Virus record (IMG/VR): IMGVR_UViG_3300017971_000185
Location: 186,001 to 250,000 of that record
Length of the DNA stretch: 64,000 nucleotides
Reading direction: 5' to 3' (one strand)
Of the stretch, positions 20,667 through 62,736 are shown in pieces (the stretch's first letter is position 1; each line of letters starts with the position of its first letter). The position numbers and the translations under genes are program-made. The notes beneath the pieces were generated by a model. That model saw only the letters and a program-made list of their open reading frames with translations, did no database searches and had not been told where the DNA came from.

Positions 20667-20694
20667 TCTACGCAGGATTCAGCCAATAGTTTAC
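20667..20694 (-). promoter_or_regulatory. 28-nt phage promoter motif, copy A
   Basis: Minus strand GTAAACT-ATTGGCT-GAAT-CCT-GCGTAGA, upstream of the lipoprotein RBS (AAGGAG). Confidence 0.7.
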
Positions 20695-20773
20695 ATTTCG
20701 CTCGAATTTACACGTTCCGAGACAGATTTGGAAGGTTTGTGGCGACGTTGGCGCGTGTAGGTCTGGCCGGGCC

Positions 20774-20787
20774 TAATTTTCCTATGG
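20774..20787 (+). promoter_or_regulatory. Candidate late promoter motif TRA-N4-SYTATGG
   Basis: TAATTTTCCTATGG 40 nt before the 1505-aa fibre gene. Similar motifs occur at 33376, 34141, 37003 and 58932(-). Confidence 0.45.
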
Positions 20788-20827
20788 GCTAGCCCTCAGT
20801 GAGCCTTCGCGGGCTTTCGGAGAGCCT

Positions 20828-23800
20828 ATGGCCCAGACTCCATTTCGCCAGCCCGGCAAAGACCTTGAGGTAACGGATGGGAACGTCATCACTGGCGCCG
20901 ATGACTCCCAGGGTGGGGACCTTACTCTTGAAGGCGGGACATCCTCTAGCGGGAACAACGACGCGGGCGATGTCGTCATCCGGCCCGGCCTTCCAAATGG
21001 CTCGGGTGCTCGCGGCATCGTCAATGTCACGAACAATGGGGGTGCTGATACAGATCCAATTCTTCAACTGACTTCCGAGACGGGAGCAAATGTTGAGGAT
21101 AGTCGCTTTTTCGTAGGGACACGAGATCCCCACACAAACGTAACTGGCAACCCTGGTGATGTCTACATCACACACAACGGCACCAGTAGTACGGTCAGCG
21201 TAAACACCGGGGCCGGGGACGCTAACACGACTTGGACAGATCTGGCGGGTGGAGGGACTGGCGGAGCAGATCCGGGCATAGAGGGGGTTCTTTGGGAAGA
21301 CATCCAGTTTTACCTCGACGCTGGGGACCGTAACTCATATCCCGGTTCCGGCTCGACCATAACGGATCTGATCGCTAGCAAGAGTTGCACGCTGTATTTC
21401 GTGACTATCACGGATAGTCACATCAACTTCAACGGCGTAAGCTCCTACCTCGACACCGGCACCCTGTCCGCTGCGCTCGTGAACCTCTTCGAAACGGGCG
21501 GGACGGTCGCCGCGTGGGTTCGTGCGGAATCAGATGGGGGAGGGAACGCGGGGCGTGTGGTGTCAACGACCGGTTCCGCAGACACGAAGGGCTGGTACTT
21601 GGATGTTAACGATGAGTCGTCCGGGCTTGTTCGTTTCAGATTTGAGCAGAACAGAGGCACGACAGACACGGTCTACACGACGTTCAGGACGGTCCCGATC
21701 AACGAGTGGGCTCATGTCGTCATCACCTACGACGGCAGCGACCCCGCGACGAAATTTCCGATCGCCTACATCAACGGTGAGCTAGTTTCCTGGGATTCAG
21801 AGACGGCGGGCTCTGGTGCCATTACGAGTGACTCAGGCGAGATCCTCTTCATCGGAAATCGGTGGGGCGCCGCTAGGACGTGGGACGGCGACATCGATCT
21901 GTTCCAACTTTGGGACCGTGTTTTGTCCGCCGATGAAGTCCGTCAGCTTTATCGAGTAACCGGCGAGGACCGATTCCGGCCTAGTTTGCTCGGAGACGCT
22001 GCTTCGACTTCTACTGGCGACGCTCCTGATGTCGAAATCAAGGCAGGCCCAGGAGGAAGTACGAGCGGTGCTGGAGGAGGCATCGCGCTGACGGCAGGAA
22101 CCACGACCGCCGGCTCGGGGGGAGGCATCACGATCACGGCCCAAGACGGCACGAGCGGAGCCGGAGACGTGATCCTCAATTCGGGGACGACTTCCTCTAG
22201 CGGTGATGGAGGAATCATCTCGTTACGTCCGGGCGTTGGCGCGGGGACAAACGACGGTTATGTCGACATTGATCCCGACTGGACCGGGGATGCGGATCCT
22301 CTCCTCCAATTCACGGTCACGGGTTCTAACGTTGACAACAACACTCAGATATTCACCGGGAACCGAAACCCCGATGGCTTCGTCACGGGAGAGTGTGGTT
22401 CCCTATACCTTCGCGGCAACACCGGGTCGAGCACGCTTTACGTCAATACGAGTGGGGCAAGCCCTGGGAGCACGTGGACGGAAATCGGTGCAGGGGGCTC
22501 TGGAGCGAGCGCGGGCATCGAAGGCGTTATCTGGGGCAACAACCAATTCTACCTCGATGCCGGCGACCGCAACAGTTACGCCGGATCGGGTAACACGTGG
22601 ACGGACATCGTTGGTTCTCGCGCCGCAACGATGACCAACCAGACCATCACTGATGGTCACATCATCTGGAACGCCAGTACGACCACGGCAACGTTCACTT
22701 CCGACTCCTCCATAGAAGACATTTGGAATGGGGGCGGTACGCTCATTGCTTGGGTTCGGGCAGATAGTTTTGGTGAAAGTAGCGTCGGTCGCATCGCGAG
22801 CACGGCGAACGCAGGTAACACCATAGGATGGTACGCAGGTGTTACGTCCGCTAGCGGCAACACCTGGAAGCTCTACTTCCGTCAGAATTTCGACAACACG
22901 GATGGCGAATGGCGCACGACCTCGACGGTAAACCTCAATGAGTGGTTGTTCTTTGCCATCACCTACGACTCTAGCTCTGCCAGTAACGAACCTACGCTCT
23001 ACATCAACACGGTTCTGGACACGACCGACGAGATAACCAACCCGATTGGCGATTACGGTTCTGAATCGGGAGCGGACTTGGACATTGGTCGTGCTGGAGA
23101 CGGCTCAGGAACGTGGGGTGGCGCGATCGAAATTGTCATGCTCTATGACACGGAGTTGTCTGACGATGCGATCCGTCAGATCTACAGTGTCACGGGGCAA
23201 GATCGTTTGCGGCCGAGTTTGATGGGCGCTCCCACGACGGACGCTAGTCGACCACCACAACCCATTCAAATTATTGCGGCTGATGGTGGGGCTACAGCCA
23301 GTGACGGAGGCGCGGTCGAAATCTCGTCCGGGGCTAGCACGACTGGTGCGGGGGGTGCTGTTTCGGTCACGGGTGGCGCGTCGGAAGGCGGCACCACGGG
23401 AGGAGACATATCGATCACAGGTGGAGACGTTGCAAGCACTAACTACAGTGCAGGTGATGTCACCATTAAGGGCGGCGATCTGGACTATTCGTCCGCGATT
23501 TCCCCAAACACGGGCGGAGACGTCACCCTCGAAAGTGGTTCGTATAGCGGGACAGGTTCGGCGCAGCCAGGCGGAATCACCATCAAGACGGGGACGGGAG
23601 GAACCAACAGCGCAGCCGCTCCCGATCTTCTTCTTCAAGTTACATCCTATGCTGGAAGCAGTGCCCTTGGAGACATCATCCTTCAAGGAGGAGACAACAC
23701 CGGGACAGGCGCAGCAGGGGGAATTCAGATTCTTGCCGGAGACGCTAGTGGTGATCCGGGTGGGGGTGTCACAATCACGGCGGGCGATGGGACCGGGGTA

Positions 23801-25345
23801 GGCGCGGTTGGGGGAGCCCTTAATCTGACTTCAGGCGGCGCGAGTGCGAGTTATACGGGCACGATCAACATTGATGTTCCGGCACAGTCTGCATCAGGCA
23901 GAGGCACGGGTGACATCAACATAACCATTGGAGACACTGCCTCCAATTACGGCTCGAATCCTTCGGGCGACATCAGTCTCACGGCAGGCGATCATACGGG
24001 CACGACGGGAACCGCTCAGGCTTCCAGCATCTTTCTCACAGCCGGGGATCATGCGGGAAATGAGAACAATGCGCCACCGGGCGATATCACCCTGAGCGCA
24101 GGAGATCAAACCGGAAGTGGTCGGGGTGCTGCTGGCGGCATCTACATTTGGGCTGGAGACAAGACAGGCGGCAGCCACAGTACTACGGCGGGTGGTCAGG
24201 TAGACATCGATGCTGGCGAGGGCAGTGGGGTAGGCCCAGGAGGGGCCGTCAGCATCACTGGCGGTTTAGCTGGCTCAACTGGAACCGGCGGCGGAGTTGA
24301 CATTGATGCAGGAGGATCTGGTACGGGAGCGACAGGTACGGGGGGAACGGTTGCCATCGATGGTGGGACCTGTAATGCGACGAATGGCGCAGGAGGCCCC
24401 GTCACCATCACGTCCGGTGCCGGTGCGGGGACGGGGAATGCTGGAGCCCTTGCGCTTAGCGGCAATGACGGAGGAGCCACGTCGGGTACAGGTGGAGATG
24501 CATCTCTGGGCGGCGGTGAAGGCGGCGGCACGGGTAGGGGAGGCAACCTTTCTCTTTTCTCGGGAACGGGTGGTGCGAACGGTGCGGGCGGGACGGTGTC
24601 GATCAACGCCGGGAGTGGCGGAGCTTCCGCGGGAGCATCGGGGACGATCACGATTTCCGGTGGCGATGGAGGCTCGGCGACAGTTGCAGGGGGAGCCGTT
24701 ACCTTTGAAGGAGGGGCTGGTAACACGACCGGAGCAGGGGGTCTTGCAACGGTTCAAGGAGGCACAGCAGGAGCTTCGGGGAATGGCGGCAGCGTAGCGA
24801 TTACGGCGCAAGATGGTGCTACGAATGGGGACGGTGGCAGTGTCACTGCGACCGCTGGTGGGGGTGCTGGGACCGGTGCCGATGGGAATGTCTCTGCCTT
24901 CGCGGACGACGACGGGTCCTTCCAGCATCGCACGCAGACGACGGGGTTCGCTGGAACGCAGTGCGACCACAAGACACTCGCGCTTCAAGCCTCTACGTCT
25001 GGCACGACTGTGTTAGCCGTGCTCGGGGTTCTGAGCACGGACGGCTTGAACATGAAATTCGACGTAAAATGTACGGGTGTCCGCGACTCCAACGACTCCG
25101 ATATCATCTCGATTTTCGCTGTGCAGACGGCGTATCGGGTTGGCGGTACGGTGTTTCTCTTGACGGCTCATGTCGATCCGACTTCGGCTCCCGGCAAGCA
25201 GACGAATGGTACGATTCCCTGGACGAACATCCAACTGGCCATCAACGGAGACAACATTGAGCTTCAAGCCACGGCCACGGCTGCCACGGGCGACTGGAAT
25301 TTCTCGATAGAGTGGACGCGACAGCTTGGCGGCTACTCCTCGTAA
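20828..25345 (+). CDS. Fibre-like virion protein with two LamG/concanavalin-A-like domains (1505 aa)
   Basis: Two copies of QFYLDAGDRNSYxGSGxTxTD...GGT..AWVRA..NEW.....TYD..LYING..WxGxI.....DR/TxLSxDxxRQxY (about 21300-21960 and 22540-23200), Gly-rich repeats and two knob motifs. Confidence 0.82.
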   Translation: MAQTPFRQPGKDLEVTDGNVITGADDSQGGDLTLEGGTSSSGNNDAGDVVIRPGLPNGSGARGIVNVTNNGGADTDPILQLTSETGANVEDSRFFVGTRDPHTNVTGNPGDVYITHNGTSSTVSVNTGAGDANTTWTDLAGGGTGGADPGIEGVLWEDIQFYLDAGDRNSYPGSGSTITDLIASKSCTLYFVTITDSHINFNGVSSYLDTGTLSAALVNLFETGGTVAAWVRAESDGGGNAGRVVSTTGSADTKGWYLDVNDESSGLVRFRFEQNRGTTDTVYTTFRTVPINEWAHVVITYDGSDPATKFPIAYINGELVSWDSETAGSGAITSDSGEILFIGNRWGAARTWDGDIDLFQLWDRVLSADEVRQLYRVTGEDRFRPSLLGDAASTSTGDAPDVEIKAGPGGSTSGAGGGIALTAGTTTAGSGGGITITAQDGTSGAGDVILNSGTTSSSGDGGIISLRPGVGAGTNDGYVDIDPDWTGDADPLLQFTVTGSNVDNNTQIFTGNRNPDGFVTGECGSLYLRGNTGSSTLYVNTSGASPGSTWTEIGAGGSGASAGIEGVIWGNNQFYLDAGDRNSYAGSGNTWTDIVGSRAATMTNQTITDGHIIWNASTTTATFTSDSSIEDIWNGGGTLIAWVRADSFGESSVGRIASTANAGNTIGWYAGVTSASGNTWKLYFRQNFDNTDGEWRTTSTVNLNEWLFFAITYDSSSASNEPTLYINTVLDTTDEITNPIGDYGSESGADLDIGRAGDGSGTWGGAIEIVMLYDTELSDDAIRQIYSVTGQDRLRPSLMGAPTTDASRPPQPIQIIAADGGATASDGGAVEISSGASTTGAGGAVSVTGGASEGGTTGGDISITGGDVASTNYSAGDVTIKGGDLDYSSAISPNTGGDVTLESGSYSGTGSAQPGGITIKTGTGGTNSAAAPDLLLQVTSYAGSSALGDIILQGGDNTGTGAAGGIQILAGDASGDPGGGVTITAGDGTGVGAVGGALNLTSGGASASYTGTINIDVPAQSASGRGTGDINITIGDTASNYGSNPSGDISLTAGDHTGTTGTAQASSIFLTAGDHAGNENNAPPGDITLSAGDQTGSGRGAAGGIYIWAGDKTGGSHSTTAGGQVDIDAGEGSGVGPGGAVSITGGLAGSTGTGGGVDIDAGGSGTGATGTGGTVAIDGGTCNATNGAGGPVTITSGAGAGTGNAGALALSGNDGGATSGTGGDASLGGGEGGGTGRGGNLSLFSGTGGANGAGGTVSINAGSGGASAGASGTITISGGDGGSATVAGGAVTFEGGAGNTTGAGGLATVQGGTAGASGNGGSVAITAQDGATNGDGGSVTATAGGGAGTGADGNVSAFADDDGSFQHRTQTTGFAGTQCDHKTLALQASTSGTTVLAVLGVLSTDGLNMKFDVKCTGVRDSNDSDIISIFAVQTAYRVGGTVFLLTAHVDPTSAPGKQTNGTIPWTNIQLAINGDNIELQATATAATGDWNFSIEWTRQLGGYSS

Positions 25346-25904: not shown

Positions 25905-26431
25905 TTACTCGTCTCGCCATTTTCGACTTCGACGGCACGCTGTTCAATGCCCCCGAAATGCCGGGCGCTTCCGACAGTTGGTACGACAGTGTAGAGTCGT
26001 TGTCACCTCCCTGCGTGCCGCAGCGGCCGACTCCCGATTGGTATATCGGGTCGACCAAGAGTGCGTTCCAGAAGGTCAAGGGCGATCCCAAGACGCATGT
26101 TGCAGTCGTGACGGGTCGCGTCGAGCCTTTGCGAGCACGGGTCGCTGAGCTTCTGCGCATGGGTGGTTTAGTCCCCGATGACCTGTTTCTGCGAAGCGGA
26201 GGCGTCACGTTGCGCTACAAAATGGCGACTCTCCGATACTTGACGAACGCACTCCGCACACTCCAGACCATCGAAATCTGGGAAGACCACAAGCACAACC
26301 TAGAGCACATGGTGCGTTACGGAAACAAGATGGGGTACTCTTGCATACCTCACTTGGTTCGAGTGAAGCGGCGCGTTTGTCCGTCTCCTGTGAAAGTCGC
26401 TGAGCGAGCATTGCGCGCAAAGTTGCTATAG
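25901..26431 (+). CDS. HAD-superfamily phosphatase, Swiss-Army-Knife RNA-repair-like type
   Basis: Motif I IFDFDGTLF.P, motif II VVTGR, DLFLR, and motif IV IWED. C-terminal tag PVKVAERAL. Confidence 0.75.
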   Translation: MITRLAIFDFDGTLFNAPEMPGASDSWYDSVESLSPPCVPQRPTPDWYIGSTKSAFQKVKGDPKTHVAVVTGRVEPLRARVAELLRMGGLVPDDLFLRSGGVTLRYKMATLRYLTNALRTLQTIEIWEDHKHNLEHMVRYGNKMGYSCIPHLVRVKRRVCPSPVKVAERALRAKLL

Positions 26432-26672: not shown

Positions 26673-28040
26673 ATGAGAGGCGCCCCGACCAAGAAAACGT
26701 ACTACCTGAGGCATCTGCCTGTGTTCCTGTGTCTCCTTCTGCTTTCAGGATGGAATCCCACAGGATTGGCGGAGATCACAGGCGACGATGGGTTGGCGGA
26801 TACTCAAGAGACAGTTTCTCAAGAAGAGACTGAAGCAAACGAATCCCCGACCGCAAACGAAACCTCAAAAGAGAAGATCGATCCTTATGCGGAGTGGGCA
26901 ACATGGTCCGAAGACCCGATCAAGAAAGAGTGCAGGTCCGATGACGAGTGCGTGCCTGATAGGACAGGACGCGAAACATACTGTCGCAAGCGAAAAGGTG
27001 CGTTAGAGGGAGATCCCGGTTACTGCCGGCCGTATTGGCTGAATCGGAAACGCCAGGCCATCCAGATGCGAAACCAACGCATCATCGTGGATGCTGTCTG
27101 CAAGCCTCCTTCGTGGTGGACCCCTGATGTGCAGTGCTGGAAATTCAAATGGCGCACTGCCAAGACATGCAACCGCAAGCACTACTGCGACCCAGACAAG
27201 CTCTCTCGATTCCTTCGTATTCCTGCGAAGCGCGAATCGACATGGGATCACCAGACGGACCACCGGCTCGATCCCGATCGTATCGCCAACCGCAACTCGT
27301 ACAAGCGGATGTATCGGAGAGGGGTATACAAGGGAAATCCGCACTTCTATGAAGGACTGACGCTCGGGAAGAGCGGCAAACCGCTCTTTCGGCTCAAGGA
27401 TCTGGAATTCCACTGCGATCCCGACAACCCGTATGACCAAAACTGCGATGGTGTCCCGGATCGTTGGAGCGTGGGCTACGGATGGTATGGGATGAACGCG
27501 GCGTTGTTTACATGGCGTTGGGATCCCATGGCTCCCCCAGAAGTCTTGGCAAAGCGTGTCCCCGCGACGCTGACAATCCTACGTGCCATGCGAAAAGCAT
27601 GGCGCAAGTTTGAGGGTGGTGTGGACTGTCGTGACGCGGACGGGAACCTCTATACCGTCGAGGGGATGTTTTCCGGCGAGCAAAAGCGGGATTACAAGAA
27701 AGACACGTGGCCTGAGCAGACTTGGTGGTCGCTTCATCGGGCTGTGTTTGGTGGGGATGTCTGCCCCATCAAGATCAAAGGCCATAAGCGGTATCGTAAG
27801 GGATTCGTCGCCAGGGCCAAGAACAAGAAAATTGATCTCGATCCAGATGAGAAAGTTACTCTGTCGATGCTCGGGAAACCGGTGCCGCGGGATCAACAGT
27901 GGGAATTTGTGCTTGCAGTCGAGGCGAAATTCGAGCCCGTGTGGCCGGAAGAAGCCGAAGGACCGGAAGAAGAAATCGAGAGAAACGATGCTATTGCCAT
28001 GAGCGATGGTGAAGAAACGGCGGTTTGGATGGCACCATGA
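26673..28040 (+). CDS. Secreted or membrane-anchored Cys-rich protein, possible lysozyme-fold domain
   Basis: N-terminal hydrophobic segment, many Cys, and AKRESTW plus GWYGMN, loosely like the ES..GLMQ motifs of lytic transglycosylases. AGGAG RBS. Confidence 0.45.
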   Translation: MRGAPTKKTYYLRHLPVFLCLLLLSGWNPTGLAEITGDDGLADTQETVSQEETEANESPTANETSKEKIDPYAEWATWSEDPIKKECRSDDECVPDRTGRETYCRKRKGALEGDPGYCRPYWLNRKRQAIQMRNQRIIVDAVCKPPSWWTPDVQCWKFKWRTAKTCNRKHYCDPDKLSRFLRIPAKRESTWDHQTDHRLDPDRIANRNSYKRMYRRGVYKGNPHFYEGLTLGKSGKPLFRLKDLEFHCDPDNPYDQNCDGVPDRWSVGYGWYGMNAALFTWRWDPMAPPEVLAKRVPATLTILRAMRKAWRKFEGGVDCRDADGNLYTVEGMFSGEQKRDYKKDTWPEQTWWSLHRAVFGGDVCPIKIKGHKRYRKGFVARAKNKKIDLDPDEKVTLSMLGKPVPRDQQWEFVLAVEAKFEPVWPEEAEGPEEEIERNDAIAMSDGEETAVWMAP

Positions 28041-28822: not shown

Positions 28823-28850
28823 GTCAACTTTTCGCGGAATCTCGCGTAGA
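28823..28850 (+). promoter_or_regulatory. 28-nt phage promoter motif, copy D
   Basis: GTCAACT-TTTCGCG-GAAT-CTC-GCGTAGA. Confidence 0.7.
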
Positions 28851-28859
28851 AGGGATGAG

Positions 28860-28990
28860 ATGACGAGTGCCCGAGATTTCGCGATCAAGGCCCACGGGGA
28901 CCAGAAGTACAACTCTGAGCCCTACAGCGTTCATCTCGATCAGGTTGCGCGGCTCGTTTCGCGAGGCAGCGTACCTGCCTGATCTATGCG
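28860..28990 (+). pseudogene. Remnant of an HD-domain (RelA/SpoT-hydrolase/Mesh1-like) gene
   Basis: ATG 28860 gives MTSARDFAIKAHGDQKYNSEPYSVHLDQVARLV, then stops at 28982. The +1 frame reads EAAYLPD, a decayed AAYLHD. Confidence 0.55.
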
Positions 28991-29805
28991 ATGCACTACA
29001 TAAGGCTCTGGATGAAGCTCTGGACACTCGGTACATGACGGGGACGTTTACCAAGAATCTAACCTTCCGCAAAGGAAGAGAGCGGTCTGCGGAACGTGCC
29101 CTTGTATGCTTCAAGGAGCTTCTGGACACCTACCATGCCGTGTCGTGGTTGCCGTCGTTTGATCACTTACTGGAGGCCGGGTGCTCATTCAGCCAGATCG
29201 ATGATGAGACAGGGAAGTTGATCACGGAAAGTCCTCCGTCGTGCGAATTGATTCCCAGGTTGCCCAAGCCAGTCGGCGTGAGCGACCCAGAGGGGACAAT
29301 TGTGGTGGCTCAAGTGCCAATGTCTTTGGGCGTGATGCTATACCGTGTGTTGCTGGACTCGTTGCCGCGGCTAACTTTGGGCGAAGAGCACACGGTGTTT
29401 GAGGCGTGGGTTCAGCCGGTTCCGACTCCTGGCCAGGAAAAGAAGCGGATGCGGTGGTGGAACGTGTGCCCGATTGTGAAGATCTTTGGGGTGAACGAGA
29501 AGGGACATTTGCTGACAGACGAAGGCATTGAAACGGTGTGTACGGCTGTGGAGAATGCCCTGACTGGAATTGAACAGGATCCTGAGGGGTATATGAAGGC
29601 TCAGACTGTGATGTCGGTGCTATCGACTGACCTGACTGTGGCGTTCGATCAGATTGCGTACCTGATACAGCAGGGATGCATGGAAGGTGAGCTGGTAAAA
29701 ATACCCGACCCAATGGTTGGAGGGCACAAGGTGGTTGACCAACTCAATGAGGAACAGATCATGGGCTACTGGATATCTCAGTCGAGAGCTAAGCCTGAAG
29801 CCTGA
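28867..29805 (+). CDS. Hypothetical protein, true start uncertain (possibly ATG 29035)
   Basis: Long open frame. Its 5' part overlaps the HD remnant. Confidence 0.55.
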   Translation: MPEISRSRPTGTRSTTLSPTAFISIRLRGSFREAAYLPDLCDALHKALDEALDTRYMTGTFTKNLTFRKGRERSAERALVCFKELLDTYHAVSWLPSFDHLLEAGCSFSQIDDETGKLITESPPSCELIPRLPKPVGVSDPEGTIVVAQVPMSLGVMLYRVLLDSLPRLTLGEEHTVFEAWVQPVPTPGQEKKRMRWWNVCPIVKIFGVNEKGHLLTDEGIETVCTAVENALTGIEQDPEGYMKAQTVMSVLSTDLTVAFDQIAYLIQQGCMEGELVKIPDPMVGGHKVVDQLNEEQIMGYWISQSRAKPEA

Positions 29806-38384: not shown

Positions 38385-38810
38385 CGGCGTCAGCACAGCG
38401 CGTGGCACATGCTCATCTTCTCCGCACGGGAGCCAAGGCTCTCAGCGGTAACGCGATTCGGTTGGAAGCAAGACATCAAGAAGGAGGCTGACCAGATCAC
38501 GAGAGAGATTCGCGATGGGTTTGTCAGGAAGAACACGATGAAGCTGAGTGCCATCGTGACCGGGAAAGGCAACCTGAAGAACATCGAAGTCCTGAGTTGG
38601 GCACGTAGCAACTTTGAAGGCGATATGCTGTTCACGTTCAAGGACGGATCGAGTTTCGAGGTACGCAACAAGACCGTGACCAAGATGTCGGTCAAGGGCC
38701 GGTGGTTCTCGCAGTACCCGACGACGTTCCACAAGGTAGTCATGCCGGACGGCAAGAAGATGCCTTCTCCGTCTGAGAAGCGCATGGTCCAGGTATTCGC
38801 GGCAGTGTGA
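38381..38810 (+). pseudogene. Frame-disrupted gene: tag-bearing start in one frame, conserved body in +1 frame
   Basis: ATG 38381 (ATGA overlap) gives MTASAQRVAHAHLLRTGAK, stop at 38491. The +1 frame (38409-38810) carries IRDGFVRKN..KGNLK..FEGD..F.F.DGS.F.V.N..FSQYPTTFH.VV.PDG. Confidence 0.55.
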
Positions 38811-41736: not shown

Positions 41737-41764
41737 ATGCACTTTTGGTAGATTCTGGCGTAGA
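41737..41764 (+). promoter_or_regulatory. 28-nt phage promoter motif, copy G
   Basis: ATGCACT-TTTGGTA-GATT-CTG-GCGTAGA, 10 nt before ATG 41775. Confidence 0.65.
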
Positions 41765-41774
41765 GGGCGTAGAG

Positions 41775-42914
41775 ATGAAGGTTCTCAAGCTACAGATCTT
41801 CCATGGCAACGAGATGAAGGAATGGCGCACGATCGAGGACGACGTGACCAAGATCGGGACGCTCCAGTCCTCGCACATCCAGCTTGAAGGGCTAGCGCGC
41901 ATGCACGCGGTGATCGAGCGCAGCACGGACACGTTCCGGCTCATCGATCTCGGCGGCGTGCCTCCGACTTTCGTCAATGGCGAGCAGATCAGGCAGGCCG
42001 AGATTCAGAATGGCGACATGATCCACTTCGGTCGAGAGGGTCCGTGGAGTATGCGCGCGACCATCGAGACAGCCGTCGAGGTTGACGTGGACCGCAAGCC
42101 GGAGGCCCCTGACTCTTTGTCACGGGATGAGCTTTTCGAGACTTTCGCCAACGCAGCCCAACGACGCAAGGAGCGAGAGGACAAGGAGGATATTCCAGAC
42201 GATGAGCTTTTTGATCATTACTATCGCAAGTACCAACGTCGTAAGGCTCAGGAGCAAGAGCGCGAGAAGGACTCGGGGCAAGAGAAGTTGTTTGAGAGCC
42301 TGTGCGAACAGATGGAGGAGCTTGTAGAGGAGCGCTCAGAAGACCAGAAGAATGACATTACACGGATGCTTACCCAGGTGAAGTCTCTGTGGAAGAGCAA
42401 GGATCCTGAAAGAAAGCAAGATCAGATCCGACGCCTTGAGGATATTATTCAGGCTCTCAAGCAAGACAGGCAAGAGAAGGAGCAGATGGCGCACGCTTTG
42501 ATCGATGCCACGAGCCAAATCATTGCGGAAGGCACGATGGAAGAGGCGTTCAAGATCTCCGAAGAAGAGGCGCTTGAGAAAGCCGCCGATCTCGTCATGG
42601 AGGTCAGTCAGTACAAGGATGCCCTCGGTCTCCTTCAGGTGTTTTCTGGGCCAAAAGAAGGCGGAGCAGGGGACAAGAAAGTCTTTCTCAAGGGGAAACA
42701 TCTCTTGGAGAAACAATTGTCGGGGGAGGTCGCTAGAAAGAGTCTGTTCTTGAGTCTCTACATCGCGCGGGCAGGCGGCTGGACGTGGGAGCAACAACAA
42801 AAGGAAATGCTGAAAGCGCGGCGTAACCTGACTGAGGAGGAGCTTCAAGTGCTTGAAAACCATCCCGCAGTCAAGAAGGTTTTTGAAGCCATGGAGAGGC
42901 AGAGCGGTAGCTAG
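41775..42914 (+). CDS. FHA-domain protein with acidic coiled-coil C-terminus
   Basis: TKIGTL.SSHIQL..LARMHAVI...LIDLG....TFVNG.....I.NGD.I.FG. Confidence 0.78.
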   Translation: MKVLKLQIFHGNEMKEWRTIEDDVTKIGTLQSSHIQLEGLARMHAVIERSTDTFRLIDLGGVPPTFVNGEQIRQAEIQNGDMIHFGREGPWSMRATIETAVEVDVDRKPEAPDSLSRDELFETFANAAQRRKEREDKEDIPDDELFDHYYRKYQRRKAQEQEREKDSGQEKLFESLCEQMEELVEERSEDQKNDITRMLTQVKSLWKSKDPERKQDQIRRLEDIIQALKQDRQEKEQMAHALIDATSQIIAEGTMEEAFKISEEEALEKAADLVMEVSQYKDALGLLQVFSGPKEGGAGDKKVFLKGKHLLEKQLSGEVARKSLFLSLYIARAGGWTWEQQQKEMLKARRNLTEEELQVLENHPAVKKVFEAMERQSGS

Positions 42915-46093: not shown

Positions 46094-46279
46094 TCATGGG
46101 ATCCTCCCCTCGACACGATTGTGATAGTCTGCCCGTGCCTTCAAGTAGTCCGCGACTGCGCGGCCGAGCGGCGTGCGCCGTCCACCCCGCTGCACGAGAC
46201 CGGCAGCGACAAGGGCATCAAGATCGACGCCATACAGGACAGCGCGCGCGTCGTCGGTGACTTGGATGATGATGCTCAT
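46094..46279 (-). CDS. Small winged-helix-like protein
   Basis: LVAAGLVQ...RTPLGRAVADYL. Start coupled to the upstream TAA. Confidence 0.55.
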   Translation of the reverse strand: MSIIIQVTDDARAVLYGVDLDALVAAGLVQRGGRRTPLGRAVADYLKARADYHNRVEGRIP

Positions 46280-46389
46280 TACTTCGTCCCACTCACGAAG
46301 ATCAGCACCTTGCCGAGCAGCCAAAGGCCGAGTCCGGCCGGGATGCAAATGACCGCGGTAAGTACGAGCAGACTGAGGATCGCTTCCAT
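46279..46389 (-). CDS. 36-aa membrane peptide
   Basis: MEAILSLLVLTAVICIPAGLGLWLLGKVLIFVSGTK, the first gene after promoter copy E. Confidence 0.55.
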   Translation of the reverse strand: MEAILSLLVLTAVICIPAGLGLWLLGKVLIFVSGTK

Positions 46390-46398
46390 TTCACCCTC

Positions 46399-46426
46399 TC
46401 TACGCGGGATTCCGGCGAAAGTATAT
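46399..46426 (-). promoter_or_regulatory. 28-nt phage promoter motif, copy E
   Basis: Minus strand ATATACT-TTCGCCG-GAAT-CCC-GCGTAGA. Confidence 0.7.
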
Positions 46427-46517: not shown

Positions 46518-46533
46518 CACGAAAGAGGGATTG

Positions 46534-46977
46534 GTGCGCAAACCGCACAAAGGCACCTTACGAGCACTCGCCAAACGATTCCGGGCTTGGCTCGTCACGC
46601 TTCCTCAGATCGCCTCTTTCGATGAGGATCTCTGTGGGGCGTGTGCGATTGCTTCGGATGGTCTGGCTCGCTTTCTTCGTAAAGAAGGTTTCGACGCTTG
46701 GTTTGTCGAGGGCCAGTACGTTCCTTGCGCCAACAGCACTCGGTCAGAGGACTTTTACGGTGCCGAGACCAACCATTGTTGGGTCGAGGTTGGTCGGAAG
46801 TGGATCGTGGACATCACTGCTAGGCAGTACAGTGGGCGATTCCCCGAGGTCTACATTGTGCCCACAGAGCATGAGGACTATCATAGATTCCGGCGAGGGC
46901 CGTATGCTCTTCGATGCGTGCGGCGGGAGTGGCCGAAAGACCACCATCCACTCGGTCGAAAGCTACGCATCAGGTAG
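46534..46977 (+). CDS. Papain/transglutaminase-like Cys-His-Asp protein
   Basis: LCGACAIAS ... NHCWVEV ... IVDITARQY. Start set at GTG 46534 after GAGGGA. Confidence 0.62.
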   Translation: MRKPHKGTLRALAKRFRAWLVTLPQIASFDEDLCGACAIASDGLARFLRKEGFDAWFVEGQYVPCANSTRSEDFYGAETNHCWVEVGRKWIVDITARQYSGRFPEVYIVPTEHEDYHRFRRGPYALRCVRREWPKDHHPLGRKLRIR

Positions 46978-46981
46978 GAGT

Positions 46982-47923
46982 ATGACTGAGATTTACATGA
47001 TGGCTGGCGTGCCGGGTTCGGGCAAGAGCACGGAAGTCAAGAAGTTGCCGCCGCACGTTTACCTGAGCCGGGACAAGGAAGGCGGCAAGGTTTTGAGCTT
47101 GCTTCCGAAAATGCATAAGGCGATTGCGGACGGGGCCGAGATCATCGTGCTCGACTGTACTTTCCTTTTGCCTGAGCACCGTGAGCCCTTTCTTCAAGCC
47201 GCGGAAAAGGCTCAGGTGCCGGTTCATCTCAAGTTTCTCGATGTCAGTAAGGAACAGGCTCAATTCAACTTGTGCTGGCGCATGTGCGAGCGCTACGGGC
47301 ACGTGCTGCGGTCCGAAGAGATGGACGAGTACAAGCACGATCCAAACATGTTCCCGCCGACTGTTCTGTTCGGATGGTTCAAGAAAATGGTGCGGCCTCA
47401 GTATGCTGAGGGTTTCGATTCGGTCGAGGTCATCAAGATCGGGCGCTGGCCTTTGCCTTCTGAATTCAAGAACAAGGCGTTCATCGTGGATTACGACGGG
47501 ACGGTACGGGAGACCAAGAGCGGAGAGATCTACCCGACTGATCCCTCCGACGTGCGAGCACTCCCACAGGCGGCTGAGAAACTCCAGAAGATAGCCAAGG
47601 AAGGAAGGCTGTTGCTTGGAGCGAGCAATCAGTCTGGTGTCGCCAAGGGTCTTCTGACCATGGAGACGGCCAGGGCATGTTTCGAGGAGGCCAATCGCCA
47701 GCTTGGCGTAGACATCGAGTATGCCTTCGACTACAGTCGGTCTGGGCCGATCACTTCCTGGCACCGAAAGCCCATGCCGGGAATCGGGGTAGACTTCATC
47801 TGGAAGCATCGGCTGGACCCGAGCCAGTGTGTTTTTGTGGGCGACATGACTTCGGACGAGACCTTCGCCCAGCGATGCGGTTTCCAGTTTGAGTGGGCAA
47901 AGGATTTCTTCGGACATGAATGA
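46982..47923 (+). CDS. Bifunctional polynucleotide 5'-kinase / 3'-phosphatase (P-loop kinase + HAD IIIA)
   Basis: MAGVPGSGKST (Walker A), VLDCT, and HAD motifs VDYDGT, SNQSGV, RKPMPG, FVGD..SD..FA. Confidence 0.88.
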   Translation: MTEIYMMAGVPGSGKSTEVKKLPPHVYLSRDKEGGKVLSLLPKMHKAIADGAEIIVLDCTFLLPEHREPFLQAAEKAQVPVHLKFLDVSKEQAQFNLCWRMCERYGHVLRSEEMDEYKHDPNMFPPTVLFGWFKKMVRPQYAEGFDSVEVIKIGRWPLPSEFKNKAFIVDYDGTVRETKSGEIYPTDPSDVRALPQAAEKLQKIAKEGRLLLGASNQSGVAKGLLTMETARACFEEANRQLGVDIEYAFDYSRSGPITSWHRKPMPGIGVDFIWKHRLDPSQCVFVGDMTSDETFAQRCGFQFEWAKDFFGHE

Positions 47924-58915: not shown

Positions 58916-58931
58916 CTCACCGGAGTCAGAT

Positions 58932-58945
58932 CCATAGCCAAATCA
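58932..58945 (-). promoter_or_regulatory. Candidate late promoter
   Basis: Minus strand TGATTTGGCTATGG 16 nt upstream of ATG 58915. Confidence 0.45.
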
Positions 58946-59012
58946 ATGGCGGCGTATGCGCAGGCGCTCCAAGGCAGCTAGCGGGGCGGTAGAAGAGATA
59001 ATCGGCCGTAAG

Positions 59013-59040
59013 GTAAACTTCTTGCTGAATTTCGCGTAGA
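59013..59040 (+). promoter_or_regulatory. 28-nt phage promoter motif, copy C
   Basis: GTAAACT-TCTTGCT-GAAT-TTC-GCGTAGA. Confidence 0.72.
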
Positions 59041-59053
59041 GAAATCGCAAGCC

Positions 59054-59479
59054 ATGGGTACGTCAAAGATCACGGCGAAGGATTGTCGCAAGTGTGGCTT
59101 GTGTTGCGTCTCTCTACACGATCAAGATGCTTTGGCCGACGTGACTCAAAAAGACATGGACCGACTCAATCCTCGTTGGGCTTCCGCTAACGTCCTAGCC
59201 ATGTCTTCGTTCGATTTTGTGGTGGCTGCCGTGAATGGGCGTCGTCTGCCGCCGGGTGCTATCCGAACCAAGTGGAAGCTCCAACGATGTGGCCCGCTTC
59301 GGGGCGTAGCGGCGTGTGCTTGCGTGGCTCTCCGAGGGTCTGTACTACACCGCACGTCGTGTTCGATCTACAAGAGACGCCCGGATAGTTGTCGGACAGC
59401 CGTGAAACCAGGAGACCAGGCTTGTTTGGAGATCCGGCGACACTGGTCAGAACATGTACAAGAGGTATGCGATGACTGA
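59054..59479 (+). CDS. YkgJ-like CxxCxxCC (Zn/Fe-S) protein
   Basis: CRKCGLCC ... CVAL..CSIY..RP..CR. Confidence 0.8.
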   Translation: MGTSKITAKDCRKCGLCCVSLHDQDALADVTQKDMDRLNPRWASANVLAMSSFDFVVAAVNGRRLPPGAIRTKWKLQRCGPLRGVAACACVALRGSVLHRTSCSIYKRRPDSCRTAVKPGDQACLEIRRHWSEHVQEVCDD

Positions 59480-60224: not shown

Positions 60225-60228
60225 GCCT

Positions 60229-60256
60229 GTATACTTTTTGGGGATTTTTGCGTAGA
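60229..60256 (+). promoter_or_regulatory. 28-nt phage promoter motif, copy H
   Basis: GTATACT-TTTTGGG-GATT-TTT-GCGTAGA, followed by the GGAG RBS. Confidence 0.68.
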
Positions 60257-60265
60257 GGAGACAAC

Positions 60266-60994
60266 ATGGGAAAGCTGTTCAAATTCTTGGGGGGCGACTG
60301 CGATTGGGCCACTTACGGAGGAAAGTGGTATCGCCAGACTGGTGACAACACCTACCACGTCATTGAGTTGTTCAACTGGGAAGAAGCATGCGGAAGAGAC
60401 GCACCAGACGACACCTATCATGTGGGTCTGAGCGAAGTGGACATTTCTGATTTGGAGCGCGTCCAAGAAGCCTTGTCCTCATGCGGATGGAAACTAAGTC
60501 TTGTTTCGACGGGCGGCGCCGTGTTGTCTGGCCTGCGTGTGGTAGTCGTTGACGACTACAGCGGAGACTGCGTCGCAACGCACAAAAGCACGGTTCGTTT
60601 GTGTCTTGTGGAGGCGCTTCACAGCTATGGTGCGAAAGCGCCACTCGGTCAGTGGAATGGAAACAACCACGCAGTGCTACGGCGGCAAGCTCGGGAGTTG
60701 TCCTTAGAGCTTGACGATCCTACGAAGTACGAGGCAGCCATGGAGAAGCCGGTGAACCAAATCGGCTCGTCTGCACGAGAGTATCAACGAGGAGACATCC
60801 AAGCCGCAGTGAGGCGCGGCGTCAAGGCCGGGAGTGTGGAGGCAGAAATCATCCACAAGATGCAGTTGGCAACCGAAGGACACACTCTAGGTGGCAAAAC
60901 CATTCCAGGCTATGGTTGCGCTCCTTGTCCGGCTTGCGGACAGACTACGTGCGACCCAAATTCATGTCCAGAGTGGGTTGGGGCAACAAAATGA
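60266..60994 (+). CDS. Hypothetical protein
   Basis: GAGGAG RBS; C-terminal Cys cluster. Confidence 0.65.
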   Translation: MGKLFKFLGGDCDWATYGGKWYRQTGDNTYHVIELFNWEEACGRDAPDDTYHVGLSEVDISDLERVQEALSSCGWKLSLVSTGGAVLSGLRVVVVDDYSGDCVATHKSTVRLCLVEALHSYGAKAPLGQWNGNNHAVLRRQARELSLELDDPTKYEAAMEKPVNQIGSSAREYQRGDIQAAVRRGVKAGSVEAEIIHKMQLATEGHTLGGKTIPGYGCAPCPACGQTTCDPNSCPEWVGATK

Positions 60995-62076: not shown

Positions 62077-62113
62077 AGCCGAAGATCGAACAACTAGAAG
62101 GTCGTGGAGGTAA

Positions 62114-62428
62114 ATGATGTCGAATCCCCACTGTAGTCCGAGGTACATCGAGACGGCGCAAAACAAGATCGAGGGGGCCAAGGGTGTTCTTGACCGTGCG
62201 AGTCGGGAAGTGTCGGAGCGGTACCAGAAGGCGAAGGAAGAGGCTCAGGCTCGGTTTGAGGAGACGGTTCGCCCGTACAGAGAAGAGTGCAAGCGACGAG
62301 AGGCCGAGGCAGCCAAGGTGCTTCTCGCTGAGCTAGACGAGATCGGAGAGGCATGGCAACGGGAGGCGAAGGAAGTGGATGAAGCCTTCATGCGCACGGT
62401 AAGAGAAGCCAAAGGAGAAGAAGCATGA
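62114..62428 (+). CDS. Coiled-coil hypothetical protein
   Basis: GGAGGT RBS; E/A/R-rich. Confidence 0.65.
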   Translation: MMSNPHCSPRYIETAQNKIEGAKGVLDRASREVSERYQKAKEEAQARFEETVRPYREECKRREAEAAKVLLAELDEIGEAWQREAKEVDEAFMRTVREAKGEEA

Positions 62429-62685
62429 CGCGCACCGAGCACTATCGGCCGGACGAGATCTTCATTGTGAAGGTCCAGCTTTCGGTGATGACCATGTATG
62501 AGGAACCCATCTTTCTGGTCTACGATGAGCACAGGATCATCATGGACCAATTCCCGCAGTCGGAGCTTCCCGAGCTAGCCGAGGCGATGGGAAAGGACTT
62601 GAAGCGGTTTTTCTACGCCGACATCTCAGAGAAAGGGCTGCTCAACATCAATACCCTGGATCCTGTTCCCTGGCAGGACTGGTGA
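62425..62685 (+). CDS. Hypothetical protein
   Basis: ATGA coupling; AAGGAG RBS. Confidence 0.62.
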   Translation: MTRTEHYRPDEIFIVKVQLSVMTMYEEPIFLVYDEHRIIMDQFPQSELPELAEAMGKDLKRFFYADISEKGLLNINTLDPVPWQDW

Positions 62686-62708
62686 CGCGCATCTGGCGCG
62701 CCTCCTCT

Positions 62709-62736
62709 GTAAACTCTCGGCGGAATCCCGCGTAGA
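62709..62736 (+). promoter_or_regulatory. 28-nt phage promoter motif, copy B
   Basis: GTAAACT-CTCGGCG-GAAT-CCC-GCGTAGA. Confidence 0.72.

What the first reader, a model, noticed from the sequence alone, without database searches (positions are those of the whole stretch)
20667..62736. Eight copies of a fixed-spacing 28-nt promoter with ECF-sigma-like architecture
Seen: RTVHACT-N7-GAWT(-like)-N3-GCGTAGA with identical spacing at 20667(-), 28823, 41737, 46399(-), 46490, 59013, 60229 and 62709. All are intergenic and point into a gene start 9-20 nt downstream; two are back-to-back. Established: many ECF sigma promoters have a -35 ending in AAC and a -10 CGT/CGTA; B. subtilis sigmaW is TGAAAC-N16-CGTA. 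Here the C of the -35 and the C of CGTA are also 16 nt apart. Inference: accessory genes are transcribed by a phage-encoded or hijacked host ECF-type sigma rather than sigma70.
Basis: partly seen in the sequence, partly recalled or inferred. Interest (0 to 1): 0.7.

Follow-up and report, generated by a model that had tools for sequence, protein, structure and literature searches.

The report
Megaphage promoter for its own sigma
A near-invariant 28-base signal placed just upstream of about 40 genes of an uncultivated 497-kb phage is most likely the promoter through which a phage-encoded ECF-like sigma factor redirects the host RNA polymerase; this is a familiar phage strategy found here in a new lineage.

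Summary
All eight sites are present at the stated coordinates, with fixed spacing (7 strict matches against 0.06 expected). The window belongs to a 497,194-bp virus record carrying about 40 copies. The consensus is GTAAACTTYY-N5-RAATCYC-GCGTAGA-GRGG, roughly 35 bits. Sites are intergenic and strictly oriented: 35 of 40 have an ORF starting 5-25 nt downstream. Three divergent pairs sit back to back.

The ECF-like reading is largely supported. AAC and CGT are 16 nt apart, and the layout superimposes on E. coli sigmaE promoters (GGAACTT-N15-GTCAAA). The genome has no recognisable T7-type or multisubunit RNA polymerase gene, and a T7 positive control worked. It does encode two divergent sigma paralogues. 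One is a 375-aa protein with regions 2 and 4, from a family confined to uncultured huge phages.

Relatives carrying that sigma have the same architecture. The CGTAG box is conserved and the upstream box varies. The expected start is the 7th-8th nt after GCGTAGA, which would make many transcripts leaderless.

No RNA data could be listed, so neither the start site nor the reading sigma is shown. The closest characterised analogue is Salmonella phage 7-11 (GTAAtg-N16-aCTA). This is a new member of a known kind and of moderate interest.

The parts
20667..20694 (-). Promoter motif copy 1 (GTAAACTATTGGCTGAATCCTGCGTAGA). It points at ATG 20651 of a 261-aa ORF (19866-20651, -), which has no Pfam hit. 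Predicted +1 is near 20660.
   Evidence: (PWM 51.8 bits, d=16)
28823..28850 (+). Promoter motif copy 2 (GTCAACTTTTCGCGGAATCTCGCGTAGA). The start codon is either ATG 28860 (40-aa ORF) or GTG 28867 (312-aa ORF, 28867-29805, no Pfam hit). Predicted +1 is near 28857.
   Evidence: (53.1 bits)
41737..41764 (+). Promoter motif copy 3, a weaker match (ATGCACTTTTGGTAGATTCTGGCGTAGA). It lies 11 nt before ATG 41775 of a 379-aa FHA-domain protein (41775-42914). Predicted +1 is near 41771.
   Evidence: 24.8 bits; PF00498, 4e-11
46399..46426 (-). Promoter motif copy 4 (ATATACTTTCGCCGGAATCCCGCGTAGA), the left arm of a divergent pair. It lies 10 nt before ATG 46389 of a 36-aa hydrophobic ORF that heads a minus-strand run of small genes (to about 45539). 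Predicted +1 is near 46392.
   Evidence: 49.1 bits
46490..46517 (+). Promoter motif copy 5, a weaker match (ATGCACTTTTCCTTCGATTCCGCGTAGA), the right arm of the divergent pair. TTG 46531 or GTG 46534 opens a roughly 148-aa ORF. A polynucleotide kinase/phosphatase-like gene follows (within 46622-47923). Predicted +1 is near 46524.
   Evidence: 26.3 bits; AAA_33, PNK3P
59013..59040 (+). Promoter motif copy 6 (GTAAACTTCTTGCTGAATTTCGCGTAGA). It lies 14 nt before ATG 59054 of a 141-aa CxxCxxCC protein (59054-59479). Predicted +1 is near 59047.
   Evidence: 43.2 bits; PF03692
60229..60256 (+). Promoter motif copy 7 (GTATACTTTTTGGGGATTTTTGCGTAGA). It lies 10 nt before ATG 60266 of a 242-aa ORF (60266-60994, no Pfam hit). 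Predicted +1 is near 60263, leaving a 3-nt leader.
   Evidence: (41.5 bits)
62709..62736 (+). Promoter motif copy 8 (GTAAACTCTCGGCGGAATCCCGCGTAGA). It lies 17 nt before ATG 62753 of a 144-aa ORF (62753-63187). GGAGAG begins at the 7th nt after the motif. Predicted +1 is near 62743.
   Evidence: (50.0 bits)

Best explanation
The 28-nt motif is the core promoter of one temporal class of genes, probably middle or accessory genes, of a 497-kb phage. The phage has no RNA polymerase of its own that can be recognised. Host core RNA polymerase is redirected to these sites by a phage-encoded, highly divergent group-4 (ECF-like) sigma factor.

The favoured sigma is the 375-aa protein P0001 (genome 293800-294927, outside the window). 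It has a region 2, a canonical region-4 helix-turn-helix and a roughly 190-aa N-terminal extension. A 280-aa paralogue at genome 42863-43705 has region 2 plus a winged-helix C-terminus and is the alternative reader.

Proposed roles of the motif parts:
- GTAAACTT is the -35 box, read by region 4.
- GCGTAGA is the -10 box, read by region 2.
- The partly conserved RAATCYC lies at about -19 to -13. It is an extra spacer or extended -10 determinant.

Transcription should start at the purine 7-8 nt after GCGTAGA. mRNAs would then be leaderless or carry a 1-4-nt leader where the ATG lies 7-11 nt after the motif. Where the ATG lies 16-24 nt after it, the mRNA would begin directly with the Shine-Dalgarno sequence GGAGAG.

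Shown: the motif, its copy number, orientation, position, footprint and lineage-wide conservation; the presence of sigma-like genes; the absence of recognisable polymerase genes.

Inferred: that a sigma-holoenzyme reads the motif, which sigma does so, the start site, and the temporal class.
For: Architecture
- AC of the -35 box and CGTAG of the -10 box are invariant in 40 of 40 sites, with one fixed spacing. The centre is less conserved. Total information is about 35 bits.
- The layout TAAACTT-N15-GTAGA superimposes on sigmaE, GGAACTT-N15-GTCAAA. For sigmaE a 16-nt spacer is strongly preferred, with a 5/6-nt discriminator and 26/27 nt from the -35 box to +1 (PMC1312014).
- It also resembles sigmaW, tGAAACnTTTt ... 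CGTA (PMC5758882).

Promoter behaviour
- Sites are intergenic and strictly oriented: 35 of 40 have an ORF starting 5-25 nt downstream, against 7 of 40 in reverse.
- Two divergent pairs, 176170(-)/176199(+) and 387018(-)/387061(+), fill 90-100-nt intergenic regions. This leaves no room for any other promoter.
- No covariation or hairpin is present.

Polymerase and sigma inventory
- PF00940, PF00562 and PF00623 give no hit at E<=1 in this genome or in five relatives, one of them 100% complete. The T7 positive control scored 1e-110.
- No polymerase family appears among the strongest Pfam and PHROG hits of the 37 largest proteins (only the first 25 families of each list were shown).
- P0001 gives Sigma70_r2 E=0.023 and Sigma70_ECF E=0.05, and PDB sigma-H 3mzy at 1e-4.
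- The top Foldseek hits for its model are ECF sigmas: sigmaE 6jbq_F and M. tuberculosis sigmaH.
- Atlas neighbours are sigma-70/ECF clusters and a cluster named 'sigma factor for late transcription'. JGI names its homologues sigma24 family.
- The paralogue is detected at E=7e-16.

Comparative evidence
- In a contig whose sigma is 87% identical, the motif is an island of identity within divergent intergenic DNA.
- Other relatives selected only for carrying the sigma family show the same architecture with other upstream boxes:
  - L039 (sigma about 50% identical): TGAACTTYY..CACGTAG, 15 sites in 11.7 kb against 1 in the control.
  - L215 (35%): GGTTCAYTTT..CTGCGTAGTA.
  - L219 (37%): GGCTCAACAT..CGTAGTAGGGG.
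  - L181 (48%): GTTCATTTT-N14-GTAGAGG.
- Region 2 of the sigma is nearly invariant across the family. The region-4 helix varies: ETLVSR goes with AACTT, and other residues go with other boxes.

Start site
- Pyrimidine is at the 6th nt (80%) and purine at the 7th nt (82%) after the motif. The same T-G is seen in L215 and L219.
- Start codons are never credibly closer than 7 nt. Several ATGs at exactly 7 nt have no Shine-Dalgarno sequence.

Precedent
- The sigma gp47 of phage 7-11 reads GTAAtg-N16-aCTA, with starts 6-9 bp from the promoter element (PMC8948821).
- Jumbo phages without a polymerase gene encode sigma factors (PMC7824862).
Against: - No transcript 5' ends are available, because no RNA run holds this DNA.
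- P0001 and its paralogue score below Pfam gathering thresholds. Foldseek E-values are weak (0.07-0.4).
- Nothing links a particular sigma to the motif except co-occurrence in the lineage. The relatives were chosen by the presence of that sigma.
- No motif copy lies upstream of either sigma gene, so the autoregulation typical of ECF sigmas is absent.
- The conserved centre (RAATCYC) and the G-rich GRGG box straight after the motif are not standard ECF features. GRGG sits at Shine-Dalgarno distance for the genes whose ATG is 10 nt after the motif. If it is used as such, the start must lie inside or right after the motif, as in T7-type promoters (TATA|GGGAGA).
- Most of the roughly 600 genes are unannotatable, so an unrecognisable polymerase cannot be excluded.
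- More distant relatives (sigma at or below about 40% identity; G001-G005) show no AACT..CGTAG enrichment.
Confidence: 0.6

Rival explanations
1. The motif is the promoter of an unrecognised phage-encoded RNA polymerase, either a single-subunit enzyme or another non-canonical type. It would be read as one contiguous roughly 30-bp element in the manner of T7. Transcription would start at the G-rich GRGG box immediately after GCGTAGA, and GRGG or GGAGAG would serve as the Shine-Dalgarno sequence.
For: - Information content is very high (about 35 bits), and conservation runs through to GRGG, as in T7 TATA|GGGAGA.
- The start-proximal box (CGTAG + G-rich) is conserved across relatives while the upstream part varies. 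This mirrors T7, T3 and SP6 promoters (established knowledge of T7-group promoters).
- GRGG lies at canonical Shine-Dalgarno distance for the genes whose ATG is 10 nt after the motif.
- Many giant ORFs (up to 3634 aa) have no Pfam or PHROG hit.
Against: - PF00940 finds nothing at E<=10, while T7 rings at 1e-110.
- No beta or beta' domains are found, nor in five relatives.
- Conservation is bipartite, with a weak centre.
- The two boxes match the ECF consensus at the canonical 16-nt spacing.
- In L039 the centre is not conserved at all.
- ATGs lying 7 nt after the motif have no usable Shine-Dalgarno sequence, which fits a start at the ATG.
- Sigma genes are present.
Confidence: 0.12
2. The motif is a sigma-type promoter, but it is read by the second phage sigma paralogue (genome 42863-43705; region 2 plus a winged-helix C-terminus) rather than by P0001. 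Alternatively, both are needed.
For: - The paralogue shares the region-2 signature: 35% identity over 81 aa, E=8e-13, and Sigma70_r2 E=0.011. It could therefore read a similar -10 box.
- Two sigmas imply two promoter classes, and only one strong class was found.
Against: - Its C-terminus resembles TrmB/IclR winged helices and not sigma region 4.
- The motif's -35 box (AACTT) is the classic target of an ECF region 4, which P0001 has.
- Motif copies cluster within 2 kb of the P0001 gene in this genome and around it in relatives.
Confidence: 0.13
3. The phage uses a host ECF sigma. The motif would mimic the promoter of a host stress regulon.
For: The motif matches the generic ECF consensus, AAC-N16-CGT. 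The host is unknown.
Against: - The phage carries its own sigma genes.
- The upstream box changes between related phages along with the phage sigma's region-4 helix.
- A scan of 185,579 reference genomes for a 20-base version of the motif gave only two isolated single hits.
- Relying on a stress-induced, anti-sigma-controlled host factor for about 40 phage operons would be unusual.
Confidence: 0.08
4. The motif is not a promoter. It would be an operator for a phage DNA-binding protein, or an RNA-level element such as a processing site or translation enhancer in polycistronic transcripts.
For: - It lies immediately upstream of ribosome-binding sites.
- Its centre (GAATC) could be a protein-binding site.
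- One copy (genome 264113) lies inside a called gene.
Against: - The motif is asymmetric and strictly oriented. It has no dyad symmetry and no covarying stem.
- Back-to-back divergent copies fill whole intergenic regions, so no other promoter could supply the transcripts.
- Its two boxes match known promoter elements at the correct spacing.
Confidence: 0.05

Closest known systems
Late promoters of Salmonella phage 7-11, read by host RNA polymerase with the phage sigma SaPh711_gp47. phiEco32 gp36 is the single-element relative (PMC8948821).
   Same: - A phage-encoded divergent sigma and no phage polymerase.
- Bipartite consensus GTAAtg-N16-aCTA, compared with GTAAAC-N16-CGTA here.
- Starts mapped 6-9 bp from the element.
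- Promoters sit in front of phage operons, and the sigma gene is not autoregulated.
   Different: - No sequence relationship was detected. tblastn of P0001 against 50,697 phage records hits only one uncultured 485-kb phage.
- The motif here is longer and far more conserved (about 35 bits), with a third conserved block and a G-rich box.
- It serves small accessory genes, not the late structural genes.
- The sigma has a roughly 190-aa N-terminal extension.
- Nothing here has been tested experimentally.
Bacterial ECF (group 4) sigma promoters: E. coli sigmaE GGAACTT-N16-TCAAA (PMC1312014) and B. subtilis sigmaW tGAAACnTTTt...CGTA (PMC5758882).
   Same: - AAC(TT) in the -35 box and CGT(A) in the -10 box.
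- A 16-nt spacer and a pyrimidine-rich tract after AAC.
- Close adherence to consensus.
- The predicted discriminator of 5-6 nt places +1 on a conserved Y-R step.
   Different: - There is no autoregulatory copy upstream of the sigma gene, and no anti-sigma gene was identified.
- The spacer block RAATCYC and the GRGG discriminator are conserved.
- The sigma falls below Pfam thresholds and has an N-terminal extension.
- The regulon is a phage gene class, not a stress response.
T7-group single-subunit polymerase promoters (TAATACGACTCACTATAGGGAGA).
   Same: - A long, nearly invariant, phage-specific element directly in front of ribosome-binding sites.
- A G-rich sequence right after the conserved block.
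- The start-proximal part is conserved between related phages while the upstream part varies.
   Different: - No T7-family polymerase gene is present.
- Conservation is bipartite with a weak centre.
- The boxes match sigma elements.
'Group 2' jumbo phages of Iyer et al. 2021, which lack a polymerase gene and carry phage sigma factors (PMC7824862).
   Same: The genome strategy is the same: no RNA polymerase gene, and sigma-like factors presumed to recruit the host enzyme.
   Different: That work defines the gene content, not the promoters. The sigma family here is not found in the cultivated jumbo phages of the 'phages' collection.

Membership tests
ECF (group 4) sigma-dependent promoter | -35 element containing AAC | tested here: met
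   A and C at motif positions 5-6 occur in 40 of 40 sites. The full AAC occurs in 29 of 40 and TAC in 9 of 40.
ECF (group 4) sigma-dependent promoter | -10 element CGT(A/C) | tested here: met
   CGTAG is invariant in 40 of 40 sites. It is conserved in relatives L039, L040, L181, L215 and L219.
ECF (group 4) sigma-dependent promoter | Spacer of 14-17 nt between the -35 and -10 elements (16 nt between AAC and CGT) | tested here: met
   The spacer is fixed at 16 nt in all copies. The reference ranges come from PMC5758882 and PMC1312014.
ECF (group 4) sigma-dependent promoter | Transcription starts 5-8 nt downstream of the -10 element | not testable with these tools
   No RNA run was listed. The evidence is indirect only: a Y-R step at the 6th/7th nt, and a lower bound of 7 nt for start codons.
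ECF (group 4) sigma-dependent promoter | Activity depends on a cognate ECF sigma bound to core RNA polymerase | not testable with these tools
   This needs in vitro transcription or a reporter assay.
ECF (group 4) sigma-dependent promoter | Autoregulatory copy upstream of the sigma's own operon (typical, not universal) | tested here: not met
   No PWM hit above 8 bits lies in the 900 nt upstream of P0001 or upstream of the paralogue. The nearest copies lie 0.9 and 1.8 kb downstream of P0001.
ECF sigma factor (protein P0001) | Sigma regions 2 and 4 present, region 3 and region 1.1 absent | tested here: inconclusive
   - Sigma70_r2 scores 14.9 bits against a cut-off of 24. Sigma70_ECF scores 13.9 bits against 21.1.
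- PDB sigma-H 3mzy matches at 1e-4 across both regions.
- The best Foldseek hits are ECF sigmas, but at E 0.07-0.4.
- The model shows two helical domains at residues 190-275 and 286-361.
- An extra roughly 190-aa N-terminal domain with no known family is present.
ECF sigma factor (protein P0001) | Adjacent cognate anti-sigma factor | not tested
   Neighbouring genes are small unknown ORFs. No anti-sigma search was made.
T7-type single-subunit RNA polymerase promoter | The genome encodes a T7-family RNA polymerase (PF00940) | tested here: not met
   No match at E<=10 in the six-frame search of the genome, while phage T7 gives 1e-110 in the same call. None was found in five relatives.
phiKZ/AR9-type non-virion polymerase promoter | The genome encodes split beta/beta'-like subunits | tested here: not met
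   PF00562 and PF00623 give no match at E<=1, while the controls ring in 14 of 14 genomes.
N4 virion-polymerase hairpin promoter | Conserved inverted repeat forming a 5-7-bp hairpin in the promoter | tested here: not met
   No column pair with Watson-Crick covariation was found; the highest mutual information is 0.40 with 15-35% pairing. The 3634-aa ORF has no PHROG or Pfam hit.
Phage 7-11 gp47 / phiEco32 gp36 sigma family | Sigma protein homologous to gp47 or gp36 | tested here: not met
   tblastn of P0001 against 50,697 phage records hits only an uncultured 485-kb phage. The resemblance is in mechanism and promoter layout only.

The most novel reading that the evidence does not exclude
A sigma family restricted to uncultured huge phages would read an unusually long, three-block promoter and launch mostly leaderless or near-leaderless mRNAs. 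The family has an ECF-like core and a conserved roughly 190-aa N-terminal domain. The promoter blocks are a variable -35 box, a block at -19 to -13, and an invariant CGTAG. The N-terminal domain would supply the extra DNA contact that ordinary ECF sigmas lack. That would make a self-contained, host-orthogonal transcription and translation-initiation module that diversifies by changing the region-4 helix and the -35 box together.
Probability: 0.3. Interest if true: 0.6.

Novelty: new member of a known kind. Interest (0 to 1): 0.45.

Why it matters
Huge phages are known almost entirely from metagenomes, and their gene-expression programmes are unknown. This motif provides several things:
- a sequence-defined regulon of about 40 transcription units in a 497-kb phage;
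- a candidate phage sigma family with hundreds of metagenomic members and no cultivated representative;
- a testable rule, in which a conserved CGTAG box pairs with a lineage-specific upstream box.

If confirmed, the rule would allow operons and temporal classes to be annotated in a whole clade of megaphages. It would also supply orthogonal sigma-promoter pairs for synthetic biology. If the predicted start site holds, it would show a phage making systematic use of leaderless mRNAs.

Tried and rejected
- RNA evidence: two run searches listed only DNA metagenomes (sediment, seawater) and no RNA run. Read laying was therefore not used, and no start site could be mapped.
- megablast of 20 kb of the window against the phage collection gave no match.
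- Hairpin or RNA-structure reading: no covariation within the motif. Upstream 59-nt windows fold only slightly better than controls (p = 0.02-0.07).
- E. coli-type sigma70 promoters are not enriched (5 found against 6.0 expected). None lies upstream of the sigma gene.
- The exact motif was sought in IMG/VR. It gave 110 isolated single hits and no other contig with several copies.
- In 185,579 reference genomes there were two isolated hits. This gave no clue to the host and no host regulon.
- AACT-N15-CGTAG in five distant relatives is not above the reversed-pattern control. The loose pattern over 80 metagenome loci is also not enriched overall. Enrichment is confined to particular lineages.
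It was set aside because it has no region 2.
- TTGCAA looked like an early -35 box but turned out to be part of CRISPR repeats.
- A CTATAGG...TAGG dyad was not above its control.
- The conserved upstream region of the sigma gene gave no convincing promoter.
- Complex prediction was not used. The host polymerase is unknown, and jobs with DNA give no verdict.

Full report
**Observation**

The pattern ACT-N7-GANT-N3-GCGTAGA with at most one mismatch occurs 7 times in the window, against 0.06 expected from shuffles. All eight coordinates, strands and the fixed spacing are correct.

The window is bases 186001-250000 of a 497,194-bp IMG/VR virus record, GC about 57%, with CheckV completeness 94%. 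Near-identical contigs of 372 kb and 499 kb exist in other samples. DNA runs from sediment and seawater metagenomes hold the sequence.

A position weight matrix, iterated on the whole genome, separates 40 sites at 24-54 bits from one at 17 bits and then background at 8 bits or less. The consensus is (A-rich)-GTAAACTTYY-N5-RAATCYC-GCGTAGA-GRGG-N-Y-R. AC and CGTAG are invariant, and the 28 nt carry roughly 35 bits.

**Position and orientation**

Thirty-nine of the 40 sites are intergenic by a home-made gene call; one lies inside a called gene. Thirty-five have an ORF of at least 40 codons that starts 5-25 nt after the final A. The figure is 7 of 40 for the opposite direction and 33% at random positions.

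The distance to the start codon ranges from 7 to 24 nt, with a peak at 10 nt.

Three pairs are divergent and back to back. In two of them (genome 176170/176199 and 387018/387061) the two motifs and their short leaders occupy the whole 90-100-nt intergenic region. No other promoter could fit there.

Sites are concentrated between 140 and 390 kb, among small genes that are mostly unannotatable. In the window the downstream genes include an FHA-domain protein, a polynucleotide kinase/phosphatase-like protein and a CxxCxxCC protein.

Sites are absent from two blocks:
- the 76-140 kb block of giant ORFs without family hits;
- the 400-494 kb plus-strand block, which holds ribonucleotide reductase, a RecD-like helicase, the portal protein and a protein with a weak head-maturation-protease match (E 1.7e-7).

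**What kind of signal it is**

The motif has no covarying columns and no conserved stem. It is asymmetric. In a contig whose sigma is 87% identical, it stands out as an island of identity in otherwise divergent intergenic DNA. It is therefore a sequence-specific, strand-specific DNA signal placed at the head of transcription units, which means a promoter.

**Which polymerase reads it**

Six-frame searches find no T7-family polymerase: PF00940 gives nothing at E<=10, while phage T7 scores 1e-110 in the same call. Nor do they find a beta domain (PF00562) or a beta' domain (PF00623). The same holds for five relatives of 230-619 kb, one of them complete. The listed (strongest) Pfam and PHROG hits of the 37 largest proteins include no polymerase family; the 14 and 24 weakest families were not shown.

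The genome does encode sigma-like proteins.
- P0001 (375 aa, genome 293800-294927) has weak Sigma70_r2 and Sigma70_ECF matches. It matches the sigma-H structure 3mzy over both regions (1e-4). Its AlphaFold model (pLDDT 70) retrieves ECF sigmas as the top Foldseek hits, though weakly. Its Atlas neighbours are sigma clusters.
- P0001 has hundreds of homologues of 340-450 aa, on contigs of up to 619 kb. Some are named sigma24 by JGI. The only GenBank phage hit is an uncultured 485-kb phage.
- A profile of the P0001 sigma domain finds one paralogue (genome 42863-43705, E=7e-16). It has the same region-2 signature but a winged-helix C-terminus.
- A 204-aa protein at 432 kb has two region-4 domains and no region 2. 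It sits next to a NusG-like gene.

Consensus sigma70 promoters are not enriched.

This gene content matches the class of jumbo phages that lack a polymerase gene and carry sigma factors (PMC7824862).

**Fit to sigma geometry**

TAAACTT-N15-GTAGA superimposes on the sigmaE promoter GGAACTT-N15-GTCAAA. For sigmaE the 16-nt spacer is strongly preferred, the discriminator is 5/6 nt, and the distance from the -35 box to +1 is 26/27 nt (PMC1312014). The boxes also match sigmaW-type promoters, tGAAACnTTTt and CGTA, including the pyrimidine tract after AAC (PMC5758882).

This geometry puts +1 at the 7th-8th nt after GCGTAGA. Three sequence features agree with that.
- Those positions are pyrimidine then purine in about 80% of sites, and T-G in relatives L215 and L219.
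- In genes whose ATG lies 16-18 nt after the motif, the Shine-Dalgarno sequence GGAGAG begins exactly at the 7th nt.
- Credible start codons are never closer than 7 nt. In this genome and in L039, several ATGs at exactly 7 nt have no Shine-Dalgarno sequence, for example GTAGACCAATCATG. That is what leaderless mRNAs look like.

One feature points the other way. The GRGG box sits at normal Shine-Dalgarno distance for the genes whose ATG is 10 nt after the motif. That would require a start inside or right after the motif, as in T7 promoters. However, GRGG is also present at sites that have their own GGAGAG further on. It is therefore at least partly a promoter feature.

**Relatives**

Loci were fetched only because they encode a relative of P0001. 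Several lineages show the same layout.

| Locus | Sigma identity | Motif |
|---|---|---|
| L040 | 87% | the same motif, twice |
| L039 | about 50% | TGAACTTYY-N-CACGTAG(W), 15 copies in 11.7 kb against 1 control hit; ATG 7-11 nt downstream |
| L181 | 48% | GTTCATTTT-N14-GTAGAGG |
| L215 | 35% | GGTTCAYTTT-N-CTGCGTAGTA |
| L219 | 37% | GGCTCAACAT or GGGTCATTTT-N-CGTAGTAGGGGTGAGACGA |
| L254 | 42% | GGCTCAACTT-N-CGTAGTAGG |
| L200 | 38% | TCCGCGTAGTT, 12 copies |

The CGTAG box and the spacing persist, while the upstream box and the centre change. In the sigma family, region 2 is almost invariant and the region-4 recognition helix varies. ETLVSR goes with AACTT, while ENSVAK, ETQVSR and ENDVSR go with other boxes. 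This is what a two-domain sigma reading a two-box promoter predicts. The sample is only five or six lineages, and the loci were selected by the sigma, so it is suggestive only.

Other relatives at 34-38% identity (G001-G005) show no AACT..CGTAG enrichment. The exact motif occurs in no other IMG/VR contig more than once. It does not occur as a cluster in any reference bacterial genome.

**Conclusion**

The best explanation, at confidence 0.6, is a phage-specific promoter class read by host core polymerase carrying a phage-encoded ECF-like sigma. P0001 is favoured because it has a proper region 4 and because motif copies cluster around its gene.

The rivals are:
- an unrecognised phage polymerase with a T7-like start (0.12);
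- a host ECF sigma (0.08);
- a non-promoter element (0.05).

The closest characterised system is phage 7-11, whose sigma gp47 reads GTAAtg-N16-aCTA with starts 6-9 bp from the promoter element (PMC8948821). The layout resembles that system, but no homology between the two sigmas was detected.

The finding is a new member of a known kind. It is solid as an observation and useful for annotating a clade of megaphages. It has some unusual features: a third conserved block, an N-terminal sigma extension and probable leaderless transcripts. These need experiments.

Noticed in passing
Outside the window: genome about 489.2-491.0 kb (L067:6700-8420); solitary copy at genome 280489: A CRISPR-like array of about 25 degenerate copies of a roughly 36-nt hairpin repeat (GTTTCCGCCC..GGGGCGGTTGCGATTACAAC). 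Spacing is 64-75 nt and at least two repeat variants are present. No cas genes were looked for.
   Followed up: partly
Outside the window: L010:806-1366 and L010:1363-1977 (genome about 431.7-432.8 kb): A NusG/Spt5-like KOW protein lies directly upstream of a 204-aa protein that has two sigma region-4 domains and no region 2. Both are inside the 94-kb, motif-free, single-strand block with portal and replication genes. This may be an antitermination or late-transcription module.
   Followed up: partly
Outside the window: L043:4600-5439 (genome 42863-43705): A second sigma paralogue has the family's region-2 signature but a TrmB/IclR-like winged-helix C-terminus in place of region 4. No promoter class was found for it.
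   Followed up: partly
Genome-wide; in the window at 26426 (CTATAGG upstream of ORF 26673-28040): CTATAGG/CCTATAGG is strongly intergenic: 20 of 25 copies. A CCTATA/CCTATC box lies 20-30 nt upstream of about 15 start codons. This may be a second promoter class.
   Followed up: partly
window 6620-14251, 14902-19869, 2925-5273, 38807-41593; also genome 92487-103391 (3634 aa): Giant ORFs of 782-3634 aa have no Pfam or PHROG hit. The neighbouring 1505-aa ORF (window 20828-25345) carries a Laminin_G_3 / concanavalin-like domain. These are presumably virion or host-interaction proteins.
   Followed up: no
Outside the window: the large proteins of alignment A2, e.g. L062:11585-16462 (ribonucleotide reductase): Five large proteins carry LAGLIDADG domains and three carry intein splicing domains. 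The ribonucleotide reductase large subunit appears to be interrupted by such an insert. A complete MmeI-like restriction-modification enzyme is also encoded.
   Followed up: no
L009:820-885 and L040:540-605 (upstream of the sigma gene): The P0001 gene and its orthologues have an A/C-rich leader without a Shine-Dalgarno sequence (CATCAAACACCGAT..CGACAAAATG), conserved between relatives. About 900 nt of non-coding DNA lies upstream. No promoter was recognised there.
   Followed up: partly
window 19866-20651 (-) and 46279-46389 (-): Two products of motif-driven genes begin with hydrophobic, signal-peptide-like or membrane-like segments (MTMKCGLRITLLALA..., MEAILSLLVLTAVICIP...). Part of the regulon may therefore be envelope-directed.
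   Followed up: no
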